A DNA stretch of 63,009 nt, filler included, from Octopus bimaculoides (Eukaryota), in NCBI RefSeq assembly GCF_001194135.2. It is 8 parts of 8 records of this genome, joined end to end, with 100 filler letters (N's around TTAATTAATTAA, not from the genome) between each part and the next. Parts side by side here need not be neighbours in the genome. Positions count along the whole stretch, not along the records: positions 9,900 to 17,445 come from NC_068998.1; 7 more parts are not named here. The stretch is one strand, 5' to 3'. The notes beneath the pieces were generated by a model. It saw nothing but the letters and a program-made list of their open reading frames with translations, was not told where the DNA came from and made no database searches. Both the position numbers and the translations under genes were made by a program. Shown one piece after another: positions 9,900-22,862 of the stretch (position 1 is its first letter; each line of letters opens with the position of its first letter).

Positions 9900-9988
<89 letters not shown>

Positions 9989-10106
9989 TAAATTATATAC
10001 ATATATAAATGTGCGGATATGTATGTGAGAGTGAGTGAGAATTGCGGTGAGAATGAGGCAGAGAGAAAGAGAGAGACGAAGAAGCTGAAAACAAGGCAAA
10101 GAGAGC

Positions 10107-10146
<40 letters not shown>

Positions 10147-10223
10147 GAGAAACAAACGTACATGTGTACATGTACATATATCATTTATTGTTATATATAT
10201 TGTATATATATTATTTATTGTTA

Positions 10224-10256
<33 letters not shown>

Positions 10257-10451
10257 CAATTCAAAACATGCGTTTTACATTGTCTGGAATTTTTAATGAC
10301 GCCATAAAATACAACATAACATAAAAACTTTCGTGTGTTTTTTTATTATGTGGTTTTAAAAACATAGTGGAAACATTTCGTCTAAATTACATACATAGAA
10401 TTTATATATACCTTTACAGGGGTAAAACATATGTCACTAGATATGGTGAGA

Positions 10452-10458
10452 TATAAAT
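10452..10458 (+). promoter_or_regulatory. TATA box of the secreted-peptide gene
   Basis: TATAAAT starts 74 nt upstream of the ATG at 10526, consistent with a TSS near 10480 and a short 5' UTR. Confidence 0.55.
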
Positions 10459-10525
10459 GATATAACTTAGATAGGTTTGAAGAAACATTCTGCCAAGACC
10501 GCTAAACTCACCAGAGAAGTCCACT

Positions 10526-10562
10526 ATGCTGCTTTTCATGGTTATTCCTCTTTTATTTATTG
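10526..10562 (+). CDS. Secreted Cys-rich peptide precursor, exon 1 (MLLFMVIPLLFI+G)
   Basis: ATG, 12 hydrophobic codons, then phase-1 consensus donor G|GTAAGT at 10563. Confidence 0.7.
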
Positions 10563-11861
10563 GTAAGTAACCATAGCAATATTGCTTCATATTTACGGCA
10601 TTTTTACTATTTCGGCAGTGTTCATAATACTTAACTATGAATAAACCCATCTGTATATGTATCTCTTTATCTATCATTCTATCCACTTAATTGTTTCTAA
10701 ATCTACTTGTCTATCTGCATAGGAATCAGCTGCTTAAAAACATTCGAGAAGCCTGTCATTTTGTATAGATTATATATGTGTATATGAGTGAGTGTGAGTG
10801 TATGTTTGGTAAATCTTGTATTATTAAACTTTTTTGTTAATGAATATTTTTATAACTANNNNNNNNNNTGTTTCAGCCAAGTGGCTGCGGTCATGCTGGT
10901 GCACCACCGTTATATATAATGATTCACTATACAGGGCATTTATTGATTATAAAAAGGCCTTCGAATTCGTCTGACGTTTCTCATTGTAAGAGGTATAACG
11001 GTTGACGGGCATTAAGAATTCAACGGTGGATGATAATGGAATGCAAGCTAACGGATAGGTATATAGCAAGAGAAAAAGAAAAGATGTTGGGAAATATTAT
11101 ATTTCATCCATATACTTTAAACTCCATTCTGTAGAAATGATGTGGAGGGCCATGGCAGGTGTTTTTACTTGGATCAATATATCATATTAAAGACTGTGAT
11201 TAAATGAACTTTGTGATAGTGATGGTAAACTACTTATTTATATGTCACCAGCTTAACTCTGTAGATATATTGAAAAATGTTTATTCTTTTGTGGGCTAAA
11301 GATTTAGCTCTATTGGCAAAAAAAAAAAGAAATAGAAAAGGATCAATATTATGACAGCCAATTGGGAACCGGAGAAGCTTACAAAGACAAAGGATCAATT
11401 TATCTCGGCTTGATGAGTTCAAAACTTTAGCCTTAACGTGCTGAACAAACGGCAAATTGGAGCCACGAAATCAAAGATATCATGTAGAAAAATAGGTCGT
11501 TGATGATAATCAATAAATATCTACAGATTCTGCTGTCAGCCACATCCAGAATGTTTGTGTATTGCAAATACAAAGATGAACAAAGCTGTCATAAATTTCC
11601 TGAAATTTTTCGGTGACCAATCAAAAACTCACGTAAATTGAACCTGTCTTTATTCACCGTTGTTCAACTTCTTTTTACGTATATAAACTATTACAATTGC
11701 TTCTCTCATGTTTTTCTTTCTTCCTATCATTTATGTTCCGTTGTCGAAACAATATAAATTCAATTCTCGAAGTTCTTCCTGTATTATCAAATAAGTAATT
11801 GTGACAATGTTCTAGTGAATAACCTTTGGTATCTGCACTAATTCAGAAGATTCCCTGAACA

Positions 11862-11904
<43 letters not shown>

Positions 11905-11940
11905 NNNNNNNNNNNNNNNNNNNNNNNNNNNNNNNNNNNN

Positions 11941-11991
<51 letters not shown>

Positions 11992-12418
11992 GATACACAT
12001 ATGTGTCTAGGGTGTGTTTGTGTTCCGAAGTGCGTAATAGATTATGAAATTCTTCCTGATGGATGATTTCGCGCTATAAAATTTCGCTTAGTTATTGTGA
12101 GACTAACAACCCGGTGTAGAATTCAATTTACATATGCTTCAGAATGCAGAGTAAGTCCTGCACAGAGCAGTTATAGGAAAACATGATGACGAATAAAAAT
12201 AAATTGTCTGAGGAGACTCAGGCACCGTTTGGCGCAGAATATGCAACAATGATATCGACCGACATTCCTCTTGCACACTTGGCGGAGTTAGGACGCTAAT
12301 CTTGTTCACTAATTTTTTTTTCTTATCATGCTTCTATTAAGTTTCTGAATCTTCTATAGATTAGAATTTTGACTGGTATTTTTAGCGACGCAGGTTCTGA
12401 TATAGTACCCCTGTATGC

Positions 12419-12458
<40 letters not shown>

Positions 12459-12770
12459 GAAGGTCACCAGTGAAAGAAGAACACAAAATAATTAGGTAGA
12501 TTATATTTAAGTCTTTAAAGATGTGTTCAGTCAGATCTACCATGTTTAAAGCTCAGATTTGCTAAGTGGAGGACAGCTCCTTATCGACAGGCTAATGACT
12601 TCCATATATATGACAAGGTGTTCATGGTCTGCGCCCGGGTAACATCAATATAGGGCATATAGACATGCACACCTTCGCACATATACAGACACACGTACAA
12701 AAAAAGAAATTGAGTTGAGATTAATATGATTTAGATCAAGTAACTGAGAAGATTATTCGGTGTTCTTTAG

Positions 12771-12861
12771 GTGACGCTGTCGCTGAAGATTGCGAAGAGT
12801 TGGCATGGAAGCATTGCCCTTACTCTTATAACATGACTTATAAAGAGGACCCTCATTGCTG
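12771..12861 (+). CDS. Secreted Cys-rich peptide precursor, exon 2 (GDAVAEDCEELAWKHCPYSYNMTYKEDPHC)
   Basis: tgttctttag|GT...TGCTG|gtatgt; 91 nt, phase 1 to 2, open; completes an A-V-A signal-peptidase motif. Confidence 0.75.
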
Positions 12862-12927
12862 GTATGTTTGATTTATTATTTATTTATTCATTTATTGGCA
12901 CACACACATACAAGCTCATGTGTGAGC

Positions 12928-12960
<33 letters not shown>

Positions 12961-13174
12961 AGGATATATATATATAAATTATATCTTCGTCAAACCAATG
13001 AGCAAAAGTAAAAATAAGATTGCAGCTGGAGATGCACCAAACTGCGTTGAATGAAATATAAGCTTATACAATCATATTTAACATCTCCCTGTCCATTTAG
13101 ACCTGGAAAGATAGTACAGTTTCTATCCGTAAGCGGATATTTTTCTGTGCGCGCAAGTGTATATTTGCTTTCAG

Positions 13175-13217
13175 CGTCAAAACTTACGTCAGCCAATACA
13201 AGCTGAATGCGCAATGA
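13175..13217 (+). CDS. Secreted Cys-rich peptide precursor, exon 3 (CVKTYVSQYKLNAQ*)
   Basis: atttgctttcag|C; phase 2 completes TGC, giving a CC pair; stop TGA at 13215-13217. Confidence 0.65.
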
Positions 13218-13411
13218 GATGCACCAGGTCGACAGTCTCCAAATATTTGCGCCAAATCATCTCATTTCATTCAGCAGTGGATGCTAATGGGTTGGTGTTA
13301 AGCAAAGTTTAATTACCCAATCATACTTGCATATTTTATAAACTCAAGAAATGTATAATCTAAAGTGTGACACAATTGAATTTCCGTGTCAGAACATAAA
13401 ATCTAAATCTT

Positions 13412-13417
13412 ATTAAA
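13412..13417 (+). terminator. Candidate polyadenylation signal ATTAAA for the peptide gene
   Basis: Variant hexamer about 200 nt after the stop; not distinctive in AT-rich DNA. Confidence 0.3.
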
Positions 13418-13759
13418 GAAATTTCCAATGATTTTATATGCTATGTCTTGATAAATTCTTATTTTCCAGGGCTTACACTAGTTTTTACGAGTGCTTTCGA
13501 AGAATTGACGAATATTGCACTAAATACTTTAAGTTCAAAAATTACAATATATGTGGGGTAAGCTACATTTCTTTTAATTCATTCAAACGTGAAGAAATAT
13601 GTATCAATGAATACAAAACGAGGCCCTATATGTTTTCTATTCCATCAATTTCCCTCTGACTTAAAGTAGTATTCGATAAATAACATAAGTCCTTTAGGTA
13701 ATATCGTTACATATATTTTTAGAATTTGAGAACTCATAAGATCGGTTACTCGATTTCCA

Positions 13760-14255
13760 AGGCGTATAAGTGACCGAAATCACCGCACTCGGCTGAGTCC
13801 TTCATCCGGTTCAAAACCAGCAATTTTGAGGCGAGGTTACAAGTTGATTACATCGACCCCTGACTAGACTAGTTCTTTGATTTATTGACCCAAGCAGGAT
13901 AAAAGGCCAAGGTGACCTTGGATAAATTCGAGCTCAGAACATAGAGAGCAGAAGTAATGCCACTATGTATCTCGCTCACCATGCTACCGATTTTGCCAGC
14001 TCGCCGCCTGCTTTTTATTAATGTAAACACGCATTACCTTTTCTGATATTAATGTAGAATTTTGGGGCAAGTTCGGCAATTTTGTGGGATGTAGTAAGTC
14101 AATTGAATCTGCTCGAATACTCAACTGGTACATATTTCATTGGACATGAAAGGTTGGAGGCAAAGCCAGCCACGGCGGAATTTGAACTCAGAAGGCGAAT
14201 ATAGACGGAAGCTTTCCAACCGGCATGCTACATATTCTGCCAACTCGCCGCCTGA
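13760..14255 (-). mobile_element. Two degenerate copies of tRNA/Deu(Nin)-domain-type SINE
   Basis: Reverse complements of the aaggcggcgagctggc..ctgagttcaaattccgcc..cctttcatcc family at about 13760-14000 and 14050-14255. Confidence 0.7.
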
Positions 14256-15329
14256 CTTTTGGTAATATAAAGATTTATTATCACTTCTGATATTGCTCTC
14301 AGAGGGAACTAAGTATCAATGTGTTATGGTGTTATCGTCTTGAAACCGAATCAACTACATGGATGAATAGGAGAAAAATACGGTGACTATGATTGGAGAG
14401 ACTATGCTCAGGTGTGGCTTTCATTATAATGTACTATTCTTTAATCAATTCTGTCTTCAATGTATCCATTTACTATATAAGTTTGGAAAAAAGATTCACG
14501 TTGAATTACTGCAAATATATATATGATGATTTCCCAAAAGCTGTTAATAATAGGAAATCCTGTTTTACTGGAAAACAGAATTCTATATCCGATCGTGTTA
14601 GTACTTGTTAATAACATGATTGAGAGTCTCGGACATGAGAAAGCTCGGATCATCATTATTCAAGTTTCTCTTGGGGGAAAAAAAAAATTCGTCTATACAT
14701 ACTTGCAGTGAAAAATGTAACAATTCACAAAAATTAAAGATATGATTTATTCTGAATACGACAATAATATAGCAATCATATTATCAAGAGCCATCGCCCG
14801 AAAAAATGGCTTTGCAATAATTGTTCTGGCTTTACATTTCTGCGTTCAAATCATGCTGAGGTCAACATTGACTTTTTCCCCTTTAGGTGTCAGTCAAATA
14901 TTCCTGTCCATGAAATCCAGTAATCGTTTGCTACAAATCTGCTAACCTTGTGGTTCAAATATACATCATTATCACCAGATATTGAATATTTATCAAAAGT
15001 ATCCAGCGATTTTTTTTCTAGGACTAGATTGCAATTTCTTATTTGAATTTTACATCTGTTAATACATAATCTAAAGTTGTCACCACTTGAAGCAAGAATC
15101 ATGAACTGGAGATATTCTCAGGAAAAAGTAATGGTATGTATTATCCTTCAAGCATTTTGTTACAAAACAAAAGCGTCCCACTGCAATGTTGGTGGTTTGT
15201 TGTCGTGCTTTTACTTTCACTGTATTCAAATTGTTTTACAGAGAATGTATGCAGTGAACGATGTTTTAGCAAACCTAATGCGCCTACTGTAATAGGAATT
15301 GTTCTGGTTTTAGGATCCACGTTCCAGTT

Positions 15330-15538
15330 ACCTCTATTTACACATCTTTGTATTTTGCTACTACATTCTGAGTTCAAATTCCAGTGAGGTCGACATTGCC
15401 TTTCATCCTTTTGGAATCGATACATCAAGTATCGATAAATTGATTTATCGATCTAGTACCAGTTACACACTGCTTTGGATGAAATCGACTAGACCCTTAC
15501 TCCAAAATCACTGCCCTTGTAGCAAAATTTGAAAACCA

Positions 15539-15540
<2 letters not shown>
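15330..15540 (+). mobile_element. tRNA/Deu(Nin)-type SINE with (TTA)n tail
   Basis: cattctgagttcaaattccagtgaggtcgacattgcctttcatccttttggaatcgat..., followed by (TAT)n. Confidence 0.75.
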
Positions 15541-15590
<50 letters not shown>

Positions 15591-16404
15591 GCATTTTTTA
15601 CTTCTACATATACTGACGTTTAATTATCTGTGTAAAATGAGAGGAATCCTTTAAGCGCAACAAACCTTTACCTGTAATAATATCCCTTTAAACTATTGCG
15701 TTCCTCTAAAATGAATCAATAGCCACTTATAAGGATATTATTTCAGGTATGGCCTCCGTATTTCCGTTCAGGCATTTGTTTGAAATCGATTATATTCTAA
15801 AGACTGCTCTCTATAACAATTATATTAGTATCCTAGAAAATGCCCTTGTGGGTGTTCCTTGAAATTGCGGAAAATACTGCCACTCGACTGCTTTTAAGAC
15901 CGTCTTATAAATGATTATTAGCTTTTAAATAATATGTCAGAAGTTTCAAAGGACGAACGGTCTGCATTGTTTTGATGCAACGTTTCGTAAAATAGAAAGG
16001 GTAATTTCAGGTGGGAAAAATGATGAAGATACGGTATATCTCAAATTTTTGAACTGTTAACAAAGTCTTAATTCTTTTATTACAGTTTTTAGTTGGAAAC
16101 TCCAGCCAACGCAATCAGGTACGTAACATCGTCTTAACAGTAGAGCACCAGCAATATCTTTGTTACTATAATATCAAGGTTAAGAGATTTGTTCAGATCT
16201 AGTAGAGTGAGAATAATAGTGTAGCAATGATACATAATTGTTACTCAAAAAGCTTCGTTGAATTTTTATCGGTTAGATCGACTCCGACGCTTCCTTTTGG
16301 ATAGCAGAAGCATCATATTACAGAAGGCTATTAATATTTGTTATTGTACATGCTTTAAACTAATATTAATTTAATCAATTAATATAGTGATATCGTCATG
16401 CAGC

Positions 16405-16830
16405 ATAAGGCAGCGATCTGGCCGAATCGTTAGCATACCAGGCGAAATACTTAACCGTAATTCCTCTGTCTTTACGTTCTGAGTTCAAATTCAACCGAGG
16501 TCGAATTTGCCTTTCGTTCTTTTGGGGTCGACAAATTAAGAACCAGTTGAGTACTGGGATCGATCCAATCGACTGGCACCCTCTCGCCGAATTCTGGGCC
16601 TTGTGCTTAGAGCAGAAATGAATCGTTAGCACGCCGGCCGAAATGCTAAGCGGTGTTTCGTCTGTCTTTACGTTTTGAGTTCATATTCCGCCGAGGTCGA
16701 CTTTTCCTTTCATACTATCGCGTTCGATAAATAAAGTACCAGTTGCGTACTGAGGTTTGTCTAATCCACTGGACCCCTTCCCCCCAAATTTCAGGCCTTG
16801 TGCCTATAGTAGAAAGCATTATTTATTATA
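16405..16830 (+). mobile_element. Head-to-tail dimer of tRNA/Deu(Nin)-type SINE
   Basis: Two consecutive units, each gaatcgttagca..ctttacgtt(c/t)tgagttca..ccgaggtcga..cctttc..ccagttg..ggccttgtgc. Confidence 0.85.
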
Positions 16831-17352
16831 CGTAGCATATCATTGTTTTACAAATTCGTTTTGGGTTATAGTATAAATTCATTGACTAATTCTAAATACT
16901 ACAATTAAACTGGTGAAAAACAAAACAAACAATACTACGCAAAGCAATATGGCGATCCTACCGTAATACTAATAAAGATGTAGACGTTTCAATGACATCT
17001 TAGATATCTCTACTATACTCATACCTAACCAAAGATAATCATTTTGTAAATCTAAACCGATTATCAATGCTCAATTATAGTTAGGGAAAATCAAAAACAC
17101 ACATACTTCAAGTACCCATATAAAAATTTGTATAAAAATTGTATCTCTATCTATCTCTTATCTTAACAGGTGGTGTTCCAGTCTGTATTGTTCTCTGTTG
17201 CAGCAGCTATAAGACTAATACAAATTTCAATAAATCTGATGTTAATCTAATTGTATGTCTGTCCCAAATTTTATTGACCCATTACATTCTAATTTTGCAG
17301 CAAGTTACTGAATACATGTAATTACATAAATGATTTTACATTATTTACATTA

Positions 17353-17387
<35 letters not shown>

Positions 17388-17411
17388 TTTCTATGTATCT
17401 CTATATAAATA

Positions 17412-17445
<34 letters not shown>

Positions 17446-22400: not shown

Positions 22401-22862
22401 CCTCAAAAAAATAAAAAACAGTCAGGAAAGTAATGTCAACTAGATACTGACTTCTTAAATTAATCATTACATTCAGTTCCCTGTTTGATTATATTATTTG
22501 AATAGGGAATTGCTATGTGGTTGTTGAACTTGCTGGAATTTGCATTGAAGAGTACCTCAAATAACAATCCACCATATTAGGTAAATTATTGGTTAATACA
22601 TATCTTCAACAATATTCATGGTTATAATCACAATAATCAGTACTAAAAGGTAAAGTAACATCCCAGAACCAGTGCTGAATGTGCCCTTCTTTAAGGTAGC
22701 ATTATATATTGTTTGTATTATTCAAAGATGACTGTTTTAGACTAAATTTCAGGAGCCAAATTATTACACAGACCTCTTTCTGAGGTGTTGAAATTCAAGG
22801 TATACTCTAAAGTACTGTATGAGTAGCAGCCCACCTGACAACCAATGATCTTTTAAATGAAT

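What the first reader, a model, noticed from the sequence alone, without database searches (positions are those of the whole stretch)
10452..13417. Hidden 3-exon gene for a small secreted 4-Cys peptide of no recognisable family
Seen: a TATA box, consensus splice sites and phase-consistent exons (1/1, 2/2) splice to MLLFMVIPLLFIGDAVA|EDCEELAWKHCPYSYNMTYKEDPHCCVKTYVSQYKLNAQ* (56 aa). The signal peptide is split across exons 1 and 2, and its A-V-A cleavage motif exists only after splicing, which is hard to get by chance. The 39-aa mature peptide has a C-x7-C-x13-CC frame, is aromatic-rich and carries an N-M-T sequon. Established: a phase-1 intron in or just after the signal peptide plus a short disulfide-rich mature region is typical of toxin, pheromone, antimicrobial and neuropeptide genes. 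Inference: a lineage-specific cephalopod secreted peptide, perhaps from salivary/venom, nidamental, skin or neural tissue. It is absent from the ORF track and short enough to be missed by annotation pipelines.
Basis: partly seen in the sequence, partly recalled or inferred. Interest (0 to 1): 0.85.

Follow-up and report, generated by a model that had tools for sequence, protein, structure and literature searches.

The report
Annotated octopus six-cysteine surface-protein gene

Summary
The piece is Octopus bimaculoides chromosome CM046618.1 (100% match).

Exon 2 splices to 13470-13557, then to 16086-16118 and 17170-17250. The 109-aa product is 100% identical over its full length to RefSeq XP_052830323.1, "uncharacterized protein LOC128249821". 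So the gene is not hidden. The "CC" and the 4-Cys frame come from the wrong acceptor; the true residue there is Trp43.

The protein has three parts:
- a signal peptide;
- an all-helical domain of about 55 aa with six invariant Cys (AlphaFold pLDDT 87);
- a short polar linker followed by a hydrophobic C-terminus that looks like a GPI-attachment signal.

At least 13 paralogues (17-43% identity) are annotated on the same chromosome; those located lie between 49.24 and 50.27 Mb. All six genes I mapped have five exons with intron phases 1/2/0/0. One paralogue lies directly upstream.

There is no match in Pfam, in PDB sequences or by Foldseek, no homologue outside O. bimaculoides, and no paper naming these genes. 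Function is unknown. My best guess is a fast-evolving GPI-anchored cell-surface binding protein. Both assembly gaps lie in intron 1 and break no reading frame.

The parts
10452..10457 (+). TATAAA, 69 nt upstream of the ATG; a possible TATA box, unverified
   Evidence: Present but not enriched in the window (20 found vs 19.1 expected). It is not at a conserved position upstream of five paralogues.
10526..10562 (+). Exon 1, coding part: MLLFMVIPLLFI + first base of Gly13; donor G|GTAAGT, phase 1
   Evidence: Identical to residues 1-13 of XP_052830323.1. It is the only signal-peptide-like phase-1 first exon upstream of exon 2.
10563..12770 (+). Intron 1 (2208 nt as assembled), holding both assembly gaps (10859-10868 and 11905-11940) and a (CA)n microsatellite around the second gap
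   Evidence: The gaps are intronic, so the frame is unaffected.
12771..12861 (+). Exon 2: end of the signal peptide (GDAVA|ED) and the first half of the Cys domain (C20, C28, C42); donor TG|GTATGT, phase 2
   Evidence: Homologous exons exist in all paralogues.
13175..13219 (+).
   Evidence: Acceptor PWM 2.7 bits, rank 37 of 389. Not in the RefSeq model. The 56-aa product is absent from the 15-billion-protein collection. No family member has a Cys after C42.
13470..13557 (+). True exon 3: W43 + AYTSFYECFRRIDEYCTKYFKFKNYNICG, the second half of the Cys domain (C51, C59, C71); acceptor TTTTCCAG|G, donor GGG|GTAAGC, ends in phase 0
   Evidence: best acceptor in the piece, 11.9 bits. Its three Cys are invariant in 13 members.
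16086..16118 (+). Exon 4, an 11-codon mini-exon FLVGNSSQRNQ: polar linker with small residues (G76-N77-S78-S79), the candidate GPI attachment (omega) site
   Evidence: A mini-exon of 27-57 nt sits at the same place in 6 of 6 paralogues mapped.
17170..17250 (+). Exon 5, coding part: VVFQSVLFSVAAAIRLIQISINLMLI + TAA (17248-17250); hydrophobic C-terminal tail
   Evidence: An AATAAA at 17229-17234 lies inside this exon.

Best explanation
Window 10526-17250 (+) is the coding region of Octopus bimaculoides gene LOC128249821. It has five coding exons (10526-10562, 12771-12861, 13470-13557, 16086-16118, 17170-17250) with intron phases 1, 2, 0, 0.

Shown here:
- The spliced product is exactly RefSeq XP_052830323.1 (109 aa).
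- It is one of at least 13 annotated paralogues on one chromosome.
- The paralogues share six invariant cysteines; all six mapped share the exon plan.
- The region between the first and last Cys is predicted with good confidence to be a compact all-helical domain.

Inferred from sequence rules (von Heijne -3/-1 rule; classical GPI-signal architecture):
- Residues 1-17 are a cleaved signal peptide (A-V-A|E).
- The six Cys form three disulfides.
- The C-terminus is a GPI-attachment signal. It consists of small residues G-N-S-S, a short polar spacer, and a moderately hydrophobic stretch running to the last residue with no cytosolic tail.
- This signal would be swapped in the ER for a GPI anchor, leaving a mature domain of about 60 residues on the outer face of the cell membrane.

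Speculative: like other small, tandemly duplicated, fast-evolving GPI-anchored Cys-rich proteins, it acts by binding a partner (receptor, ligand or another cell surface). The tissue and the partner are unknown.

For: Identity and position:
- 100% identity and 100% coverage to the 109-aa NCBI protein, the only hit among 5.8 billion clusters. The accession is XP_052830323.1.
- The piece is 100% identical to CM046618.1:49.37 Mb. The gene called there spans exactly ATG to stop.
- The search found a single exact GT-AG spliced solution for this gene and for five paralogues. All have five exons and phases 1/2/0/0.

Family:
- Exhaustive HMMER over 1.84 billion representatives finds 12 relatives of 99-140 aa.
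- All are O. bimaculoides 'uncharacterized protein LOC...' on the same 55.6-Mb chromosome. Those located lie at 49.24-50.27 Mb.
- Six Cys are invariant at 17-43% pairwise identity.

Coding status:
- An open 109-codon frame has chance probability of about 2.5e-4 at this base composition.

Structure and C-terminus:
- AlphaFold2 on the domain alignment gives mean pLDDT 86.9 with five helices.
- Every family tail inspected (11 of 13 scored; all 13 visible in the alignment) has a hydrophobic stretch of about 13-26 residues. It ends 0-10 residues from the C-terminus and is preceded by S/N/G-rich polar residues.
Against: - No transcript evidence could be examined. The protein is recorded on only one contig, the genome itself, with no transcriptome-assembly copy. 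Splicing and expression therefore rest on the RefSeq model plus paralogue conservation.
- No GPI or signal-peptide predictor was available, so both calls are rule-based.
- The tail of this particular member is unusually long (26 residues) and contains an Arg.
- No orthologue in another species was found. Purifying selection is inferred only from the Cys and exon conservation among old paralogues; dS is saturated, and the closest pair gives dN/dS of about 0.55.
- Continuity across the first assembly gap in intron 1 cannot be proven.
Confidence: 0.8

Rival explanations
1. One reading: a 3-exon gene, or an alternative terminal-exon isoform, that uses the acceptor at 13175 and gives a 56-aa precursor and a free secreted 39-aa four-Cys peptide.
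For: The splice is phase-compatible and has a usable TTTCAG acceptor and an ATTAAA 193 nt downstream of its stop. Some paralogues do have RefSeq isoforms X1/X2, so alternative splicing occurs in the family.
Against: - The acceptor is weak relative to the family (2.7 bits, rank 37 of 389).
- The 56-aa sequence is absent from the 15-billion-protein collection, and nothing sharing words with exons 1-2 other than the 109-aa protein was found.
- The tail peptide has no homologue in any paralogue.
- It would remove three of the six invariant Cys and add an unpaired-looking fourth Cys.
- Any AG in an AT-rich intron yields a short terminal 'exon' by chance.
Confidence: 0.06
2. Same five-exon gene, but the C-terminal hydrophobic stretch is a permanent transmembrane or tail anchor (type I, essentially no cytoplasmic tail) rather than a GPI signal.
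For: In this member the hydrophobic segment is 26 residues long, enough to span a bilayer. AlphaFold models residues 79-108 as one long helix.
Against: - In most paralogues the uncharged C-terminal run is only about 15-21 residues. It is interrupted by S/T/Q/N and ends at the very C-terminus with no basic cytosolic stop-transfer residues.
- A cluster of small residues lies about 8-12 positions upstream.
- This is the textbook GPI-signal layout rather than a transmembrane-anchor layout.
Confidence: 0.2
3. The domain is a very diverged, stand-alone copy of the RGM N-terminal domain (PF06535). That domain is the disulfide-stapled helical module by which GPI-anchored repulsive guidance molecules bind BMPs. 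On this reading the family would be mini BMP co-receptors or decoys.
For: - Two paralogues give weak Pfam RGM_N hits in the same register (P0010 E 0.02, P0005 E 0.11), aligning their Cys 3-5 to profile positions 29/38/46.
- Human RGMA/B/C N-domains, verified against PDB 4uhy, 4uhz and 4ui1, also have six Cys with the identical central spacing C-x8-C-x7-C.
- RGMs are GPI-anchored (established knowledge).
Against: - All hits are far below the gathering score (13-16 bits against 24.2), and LOC128249821 itself gives none.
- hhalign of the family profile against the RGMA/B/C alignment gives probability 2% and P 0.024, over 29 columns only.
- The family consensus gives no RGM_N hit.
- An HMM search of PDB sequences found nothing at E<=10, and Foldseek found no RGM chain.
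- The outer Cys spacings differ (x7/x13/x11 against x4/x22/x21), and there is no von Willebrand D-like / GDPH domain.
Confidence: 0.05
4. The locus is an unexpressed or decaying duplicate (pseudogene) inside the tandem array, and the RefSeq model is a homology-propagated prediction.
For: No transcriptome-derived copy of the protein is on record. The family is evolving fast.
Against: All five exons are open. All eight splice sites are canonical, all six Cys are retained, and the start and stop are intact, despite saturated synonymous divergence from every paralogue. The chance of an open frame of this length is about 2.5e-4.
Confidence: 0.08

Closest known systems
RefSeq XP_052830323.1, uncharacterized protein LOC128249821 (Octopus bimaculoides), and its paralogues LOC128249755/757/820/822/831/832/838/839/865/936/945 and LOC106877823
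   Same: Identical protein. The paralogues share the signal peptide, the six invariant Cys and the hydrophobic C-terminus. All six genes mapped share the five-exon plan with phases 1/2/0/0, and all 13 are on one chromosome.
   Different: Nothing differs for LOC128249821 itself. The paralogues are only 26-38% identical to it. No member has a name, a Pfam family, a structure or a paper.
Ly6/uPAR (LU-domain) small GPI-anchored proteins (CD59, Lynx1, SPACA4/Bouncer)
   Same: Same overall architecture: signal peptide, one small disulfide-rich domain of 60-80 residues, and a GPI signal. They also share clustered, fast-evolving multigene families and the existence of tethered binding modules. This is the best functional analogy.
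   Different: The LU domain is a three-finger beta fold with 8-10 Cys. This family is predicted all-helical with six Cys. There is no Pfam LU hit. It is an analogue, not a member.
RGM N-terminal domain (PF06535; PDB 4UHY, 4UHZ, 4UI1)
   Same: A small disulfide-rich domain with six Cys and the identical central C-x8-C-x7-C spacing, carried by GPI-anchored proteins.
   Different: The similarity is not significant (13-16 bits; hhalign probability 2%). The outer Cys spacings differ, there is no vWD-like/GDPH domain, and no structural match was found.
Small secreted disulfide-rich toxins, pheromones and neuropeptide precursors with a phase-1 intron in the signal peptide
   Same: A signal peptide split by a phase-1 intron, a small Cys-rich mature region, and lineage-specific tandem duplication.
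   Different: The real ORF continues into a second half-domain and a hydrophobic tail. The mature region shows no dibasic processing-site layout. The recently described octopod tandem toxin superfamily SF1 consists of tachykinin/octotensin precursors (bioRxiv 10.64898/2026.02.02.703354), which are unrelated.

Membership tests
Unnamed O. bimaculoides six-Cys family (LOC128249821 and paralogues) | Significant sequence similarity to other members | tested here: met
   phmmer E-values from 5e-11 to 5.5e-4 to 12 paralogues, searched against 1.84 billion representatives.
Unnamed O. bimaculoides six-Cys family (LOC128249821 and paralogues) | Six invariant Cys, C-x7-C-x(11-16)-C-x8-C-x(6-7)-C-x(9-11)-C | tested here: met
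   Alignments A1 and A2: C20, C28, C42, C51, C59 and C71 are invariant in 13 of 13 members.
Unnamed O. bimaculoides six-Cys family (LOC128249821 and paralogues) | Five coding exons with intron phases 1/2/0/0, and intron 1 inside the signal peptide | tested here: met
   Exact spliced mapping of six genes, each with a single solution found and the same phases.
Unnamed O. bimaculoides six-Cys family (LOC128249821 and paralogues) | Location in the cluster on chromosome CM046618.1 | tested here: met
   The window maps to 49.37 Mb, with paralogue LOC128249822 directly upstream. Other members lie at 49.24, 49.77 and 50.24 Mb.
GPI-anchored proteins (class) | N-terminal cleavable signal peptide | tested here: inconclusive
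   By inspection only: an 11-residue hydrophobic core followed by A-V-A|E, which fits the -3/-1 rule, and the pattern is conserved in the family. No SignalP was available.
GPI-anchored proteins (class) | C-terminal signal: small omega/omega+2 residues, a polar spacer, and a hydrophobic stretch to the C-terminus with no cytosolic tail | tested here: inconclusive
   The layout is present in this protein (G76-N77-S78-S79, QRNQ, 26-residue tail) and in the paralogue tails inspected. This is rule-based only; no NetGPI or PredGPI was available.
GPI-anchored proteins (class) | Biochemical release by PI-PLC, or detection of a lipid anchor | not testable with these tools
   Needs an experiment.
RGM N-terminal domain, PF06535 | Score at or above the Pfam gathering threshold (24.2 bits) | tested here: not met
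   No hit for this protein. Two paralogues score 15.6 and 13.2 bits. The family consensus gives no hit.
RGM N-terminal domain, PF06535 | Profile-profile or structural similarity to solved RGM N-domains | tested here: not met
   hhalign probability 2%, P 0.024. Foldseek found no RGM chain. hmmsearch of PDB sequences found nothing.
RGM N-terminal domain, PF06535 | Followed by a von Willebrand D-like domain with a GDPH autocleavage site | tested here: not met
   The protein is 109 aa, and the domain is followed directly by the linker and the hydrophobic tail.
Ly6/uPAR (LU domain) | Three-finger beta fold with 8-10 Cys; Pfam LU-domain hit | tested here: not met
   The prediction is all-helical with no strands. 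There are six Cys. No Pfam hit at E<=10.
   The true ORF continues through exons 3-5 and ends in a hydrophobic tail.

The most novel reading that the evidence does not exclude
The 13 or more clustered genes would define an undescribed, octopus-restricted fold family. Each encodes a helical module of about 55 residues with three disulfides, displayed on the cell surface by a GPI anchor. The modules would diversify rapidly as a repertoire of tethered binding proteins, a helical counterpart of Ly6/Lynx-type receptor modulators. They might instead descend from the BMP-binding RGM N-domain. Roles in neural, chemosensory or gamete recognition are conceivable.
Probability: 0.12. Interest if true: 0.55.

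Novelty: already known. Interest (0 to 1): 0.25.

Why it matters
For the scan, this case shows two things. A tool-less reader can correctly spot the 5' half of a real small spliced gene. It can also mis-terminate the gene at a chance intronic acceptor and so derive a wrong product, Cys framework and biology.

Biologically, the gene adds nothing to the annotation, because it is already in RefSeq. What is worth a note is the family it belongs to. It is an uncharacterised, apparently octopus-restricted cluster of at least 13 small six-Cys helical proteins with GPI-like tails, with no detectable relatives, structures or literature. If these proteins are expressed in the nervous system, suckers or gonads, they would be candidates for lineage-specific cell-surface recognition or receptor modulation.

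Tried and rejected
1. Rejected on several grounds:
- the RefSeq identity of the 5-exon product;
- paralogue exon conservation;
- acceptor scoring;
- absence of the 56-aa product from the collection.

2. TATA box and ATTAAA as supporting signals. Neither hexamer is rarer than chance in this AT-rich DNA, and there is no conserved TATA position in the paralogues.

3. Alternative first exons between the gaps and exon 2. None were found.

4. Searches for a known family or fold:
- Pfam on the protein, all 13 members and the family consensus gave only sub-threshold noise: IgA0_D2, Big defensin, EBA-175_VI, RGM_N and others.
- PDB sequence searches with the profile and with the consensus found nothing meaningful.
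- Foldseek of the full-length model and the domain model against PDB found nothing with E<=0.001; the domain model gave 0 hits.

5. The RGM_N lead was followed with real RGMA/B/C sequences and hhalign. It is not supported.

6. Word-indexed homologue searches:
- The profile search returned only 5 of the 13 known members.
- A concatenated-paralogue query returned nothing, not even the members themselves.
- These two searches are therefore uninformative about other species.

7. dN/dS between paralogues: synonymous sites are saturated except in one pair, so there is no clean selection test.

8. Rfam and tRNA scans of the piece found nothing.

9. Literature:
- No paper mentions the LOC or XP identifiers.
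- Keyword searches found nothing on the family.
- The octopod tandem toxin superfamily SF1 in bioRxiv 10.64898/2026.02.02.703354 consists of tachykinin/octotensin precursors, not this family.

10. Disulfide connectivity could not be read, because model coordinates are not exposed.
Full report
**Where the piece comes from.** The piece (window 9900-17445) is 100% identical to Octopus bimaculoides assembly GCA_001194135.2, chromosome CM046618.1, around 49.38 Mb. Window coordinate = L001 coordinate + 525. GC content is about 27-43%. The sequence is rich in microsatellites and interspersed repeats.

**Checking the observation.**
- An ATG sits at 10526, and exon 1 ends at 10562 with donor G|GTAAGT.
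- Acceptor TTTAG precedes 12771, and donor TG|GTATGT follows 12861.
- Acceptor TTTCAG precedes 13175, and a TGA lies at 13217-13219.
- The concatenation translates to the 56-aa peptide exactly as written.

I noticed a second, stronger acceptor (TTATTTTCCAG|G) at 13470. It is also phase-compatible with exon 2 and opens a Cys-rich exon ending at a GTAAGC donor (13557). Two further phase-0 exons follow, at 16086-16118 and 17170-17250. This five-exon splice gives a 109-aa protein.

**Which model is real.**
- Searched against 5.8 billion protein clusters, the 109-aa product has one hit. That hit is 100% identical over 100% of its length: 'uncharacterized protein LOC128249821 [Octopus bimaculoides]', accession XP_052830323.1.
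- The gene called on the chromosome spans exactly my ATG to my stop.
- The query contained exons 1-2, and it retrieved no other protein sharing words with them.

An exhaustive HMMER search of 1.84 billion representatives found 12 relatives of 99-140 aa, plus one bacterial repeat protein that I treat as spurious.
- All 12 are O. bimaculoides 'uncharacterized protein LOC...' entries on the same 55.6-Mb chromosome.
- One of them, LOC128249822, lies directly upstream of this gene on the same strand.
- Others map to 49.24, 49.77 and 50.24 Mb.

I mapped six of these proteins exactly onto their loci. For each, the search found a single GT-AG solution with five exons and intron phases 1/2/0/0. Intron 1 lies inside the signal peptide, and a mini-exon of 27-57 nt precedes the last exon.

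A position weight matrix (PWM) trained on the 20 acceptors of the other five genes scores the sites as follows:

| Acceptor | Score | Rank among 389 AGs in the piece |
|---|---|---|
| 13470 (annotated) | 11.9 bits | 1 |

The PWM is crude, but the contrast is large.

TATAAA is not enriched in the window (20 found, 19.1 expected). AATAAA or ATTAAA occurs 14 times in the piece.

Conclusion: exons 1 and 2 are right, and the third exon is a chance intronic AG.

**The assembly gaps.** Both N runs (10859-10868 and 11905-11940) are inside intron 1 (10563-12770), so no reading frame crosses them.
- They are present in the public assembly too.
- The second gap is flanked on both sides by (CA)n, consistent with a microsatellite that was not read through.
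- The first gap has unrelated unique flanks, so continuity there cannot be proven.
- Exon 1 is the only signal-peptide-like phase-1 first exon upstream of exon 2.
- Exon 1 aligns with the family's exon 1.
- The intron length, 2208 nt as assembled, is the longest of the six mapped but close to the paralogues' 269-1855 nt.

**What the protein looks like.** The alignment of 13 members shows four features.
- A hydrophobic N-terminus ends in a small-x-small motif (here A-V-A|E) just before the first Cys.
- Six Cys are invariant (C20, C28, C42, C51, C59, C71), with spacing C-x7-C-x13-C-x8-C-x7-C-x11-C in this member.
- A polar linker is rich in S/N/G.
- A hydrophobic stretch runs to within 0-10 residues of the C-terminus.

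Pairwise identity is only 17-43%, and synonymous sites are saturated. The closest pair has dN 0.42 and dS 0.77. The family is therefore old and fast-evolving, yet keeps its Cys frame and exon plan. An open 109-codon frame has a chance probability of about 2.5e-4 at this composition. This argues for a functional coding gene even though I could not examine transcripts.

AlphaFold2 with the family alignment gives pLDDT 77.7 for the full length and 86.9 for the domain alone. The domain prediction has five short helices and no strands.

**Comparison with known families.**
- Pfam gives nothing above threshold for this protein, for any member, or for the family consensus.
- HMM and phmmer searches of all PDB sequences give nothing meaningful.
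- Foldseek against PDB gives no hit with E<=0.001 for the full model and none at all for the domain model.

One lead was followed. Two paralogues give weak hits to the RGM N-terminal domain in the same register (E 0.02 and 0.11).
- RGMs are GPI-anchored.
- Their N-domain, whose sequences I verified against PDB 4uhy, 4uhz and 4ui1, also has six Cys with the identical central C-x8-C-x7-C spacing.
- Against this, hhalign of the two alignments gives probability 2% (P 0.024) over 29 columns.
- The family consensus does not hit RGM_N.
- The outer spacings differ, and the rest of the RGM architecture is absent.
- I treat this as an unsupported resemblance.

The Ly6/uPAR family is the nearest functional analogue: signal peptide, small disulfide domain, GPI signal, and clustered fast-evolving genes. 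It has a beta three-finger fold, so this is not a member.

**Most likely mechanism.**
- Shown: the gene structure, the product, the family, the Cys conservation and the predicted helical domain.
- Inferred from standard sequence rules: co-translational entry into the ER, signal-peptide cleavage after A17, three disulfides, and replacement of the C-terminal hydrophobic peptide by a GPI anchor near N77-S79. This would leave a domain of about 60 residues tethered to the outer membrane leaflet.
- Speculative: it acts as a tethered binding module for a receptor, a ligand or another cell.
- A permanent transmembrane anchor is the main structural rival.

**Literature.** No paper in the searchable library mentions the LOC or XP identifiers. 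Keyword searches found nothing on this family. A 2026 preprint on cephalopod venom describes an octopod-restricted tandem toxin superfamily (SF1). Those genes are tachykinin/octotensin precursors, unrelated to this family. The preprint's 27 superfamilies of unknown function could not be checked, because no supplement is held.

**Limits.**
- No RNA-seq, SignalP or NetGPI was available, and no cephalopod genomes other than the loci fetched.
- Two of the three word-indexed homologue searches under-recovered even known members. 'Octopus bimaculoides only' therefore rests on the single exhaustive HMMER search. It may reflect missing annotation in other species rather than true absence.

**Verdict.** This is a real gene, correctly spotted at its 5' end, mis-modelled at its 3' end, and already annotated. 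Its family is uncharacterised and mildly interesting, but nothing here is surprising to a specialist. Interest 0.25.

Noticed in passing
L001:1553-5843 (+); CM046618.1, upstream of the piece and outside it: Tandem paralogue LOC128249822 (XP_052830324.1, 105 aa, 31% identical). It lies on the same strand, its stop codon about 4.2 kb (as assembled, including a 3.2-kb N run) upstream of this gene's ATG, with the same five-exon, phase 1/2/0/0 plan. I reconstructed it by hand and it matched the database protein exactly.
   Followed up: yes
L004:20554-25763, with an exon at 22600-22704: A gene called with a 171-aa product downstream of LOC128249936 carries a family-like exon 2 (ISGFSTPADCNTLGKKRCPKENIDFNAIKKGDNFC). 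The family is therefore larger than the 13 representatives found.
   Followed up: partly
L003:1678-1740 and 2794-2859: Two extra copies of the exon-1-like sequence of LOC128249755 (67-77% identical at the protein level) lie 7-8 kb upstream of that gene. They could be duplicated or alternative first exons, or remnants of a broken copy.
   Followed up: no
window 13980-14050 and 14224-14294; 15362-15429; 16424-16591 and 16620-16787: Interspersed repeat copies (SINE-like, 76-81% identical to each other) sit in introns 3 and 4, including a tandem pair at 16424-16787. There was no Rfam or tRNA hit.
   Followed up: partly
window 17229-17234: A canonical AATAAA lies inside the last coding exon, 14 nt before the stop codon. 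No AATAAA or ATTAAA follows the stop within the piece, so the poly(A) site may lie almost at the stop or beyond the end of the piece.
   Followed up: no
window 9900-10260, 11865-11990, 12420-12450, 12930-12975, 15538-15591, 17350-17445: Dense microsatellites are present: (TA)n, (TG)n, (GA)n, (CA)n and (ATT)n. The 36-N assembly gap sits in the middle of the (CA)n tract.
   Followed up: partly
P0006 vs P0015 (LOC128249945 isoforms X2/X1); P0009 vs P0016 (LOC106877823 X2/X1): RefSeq lists alternative isoforms in some paralogues. For LOC128249945 the two differ by a 7-residue insertion (CDCDFPV) at the exon 4/5 junction; LOC106877823 isoforms differ by 10 residues and were not compared. Alternative splicing in the family appears to affect the linker rather than truncating the Cys domain.
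   Followed up: partly
P0010 residues 36-60 and P0005 residues 34-72: There are weak, same-register Pfam hits to the RGM N-terminal domain. The central C-x8-C-x7-C spacing is identical to that of human RGMA/B/C, which are also GPI-anchored. The similarity is not significant on follow-up.
   Followed up: yes
(tool behaviour): The word-indexed homologue search recovered only 5 of 13 known family members from a profile containing all of them. It recovered none from a concatenation of 12 members. Negative results from that tool for short, divergent proteins should not be read as absence.
   Followed up: no
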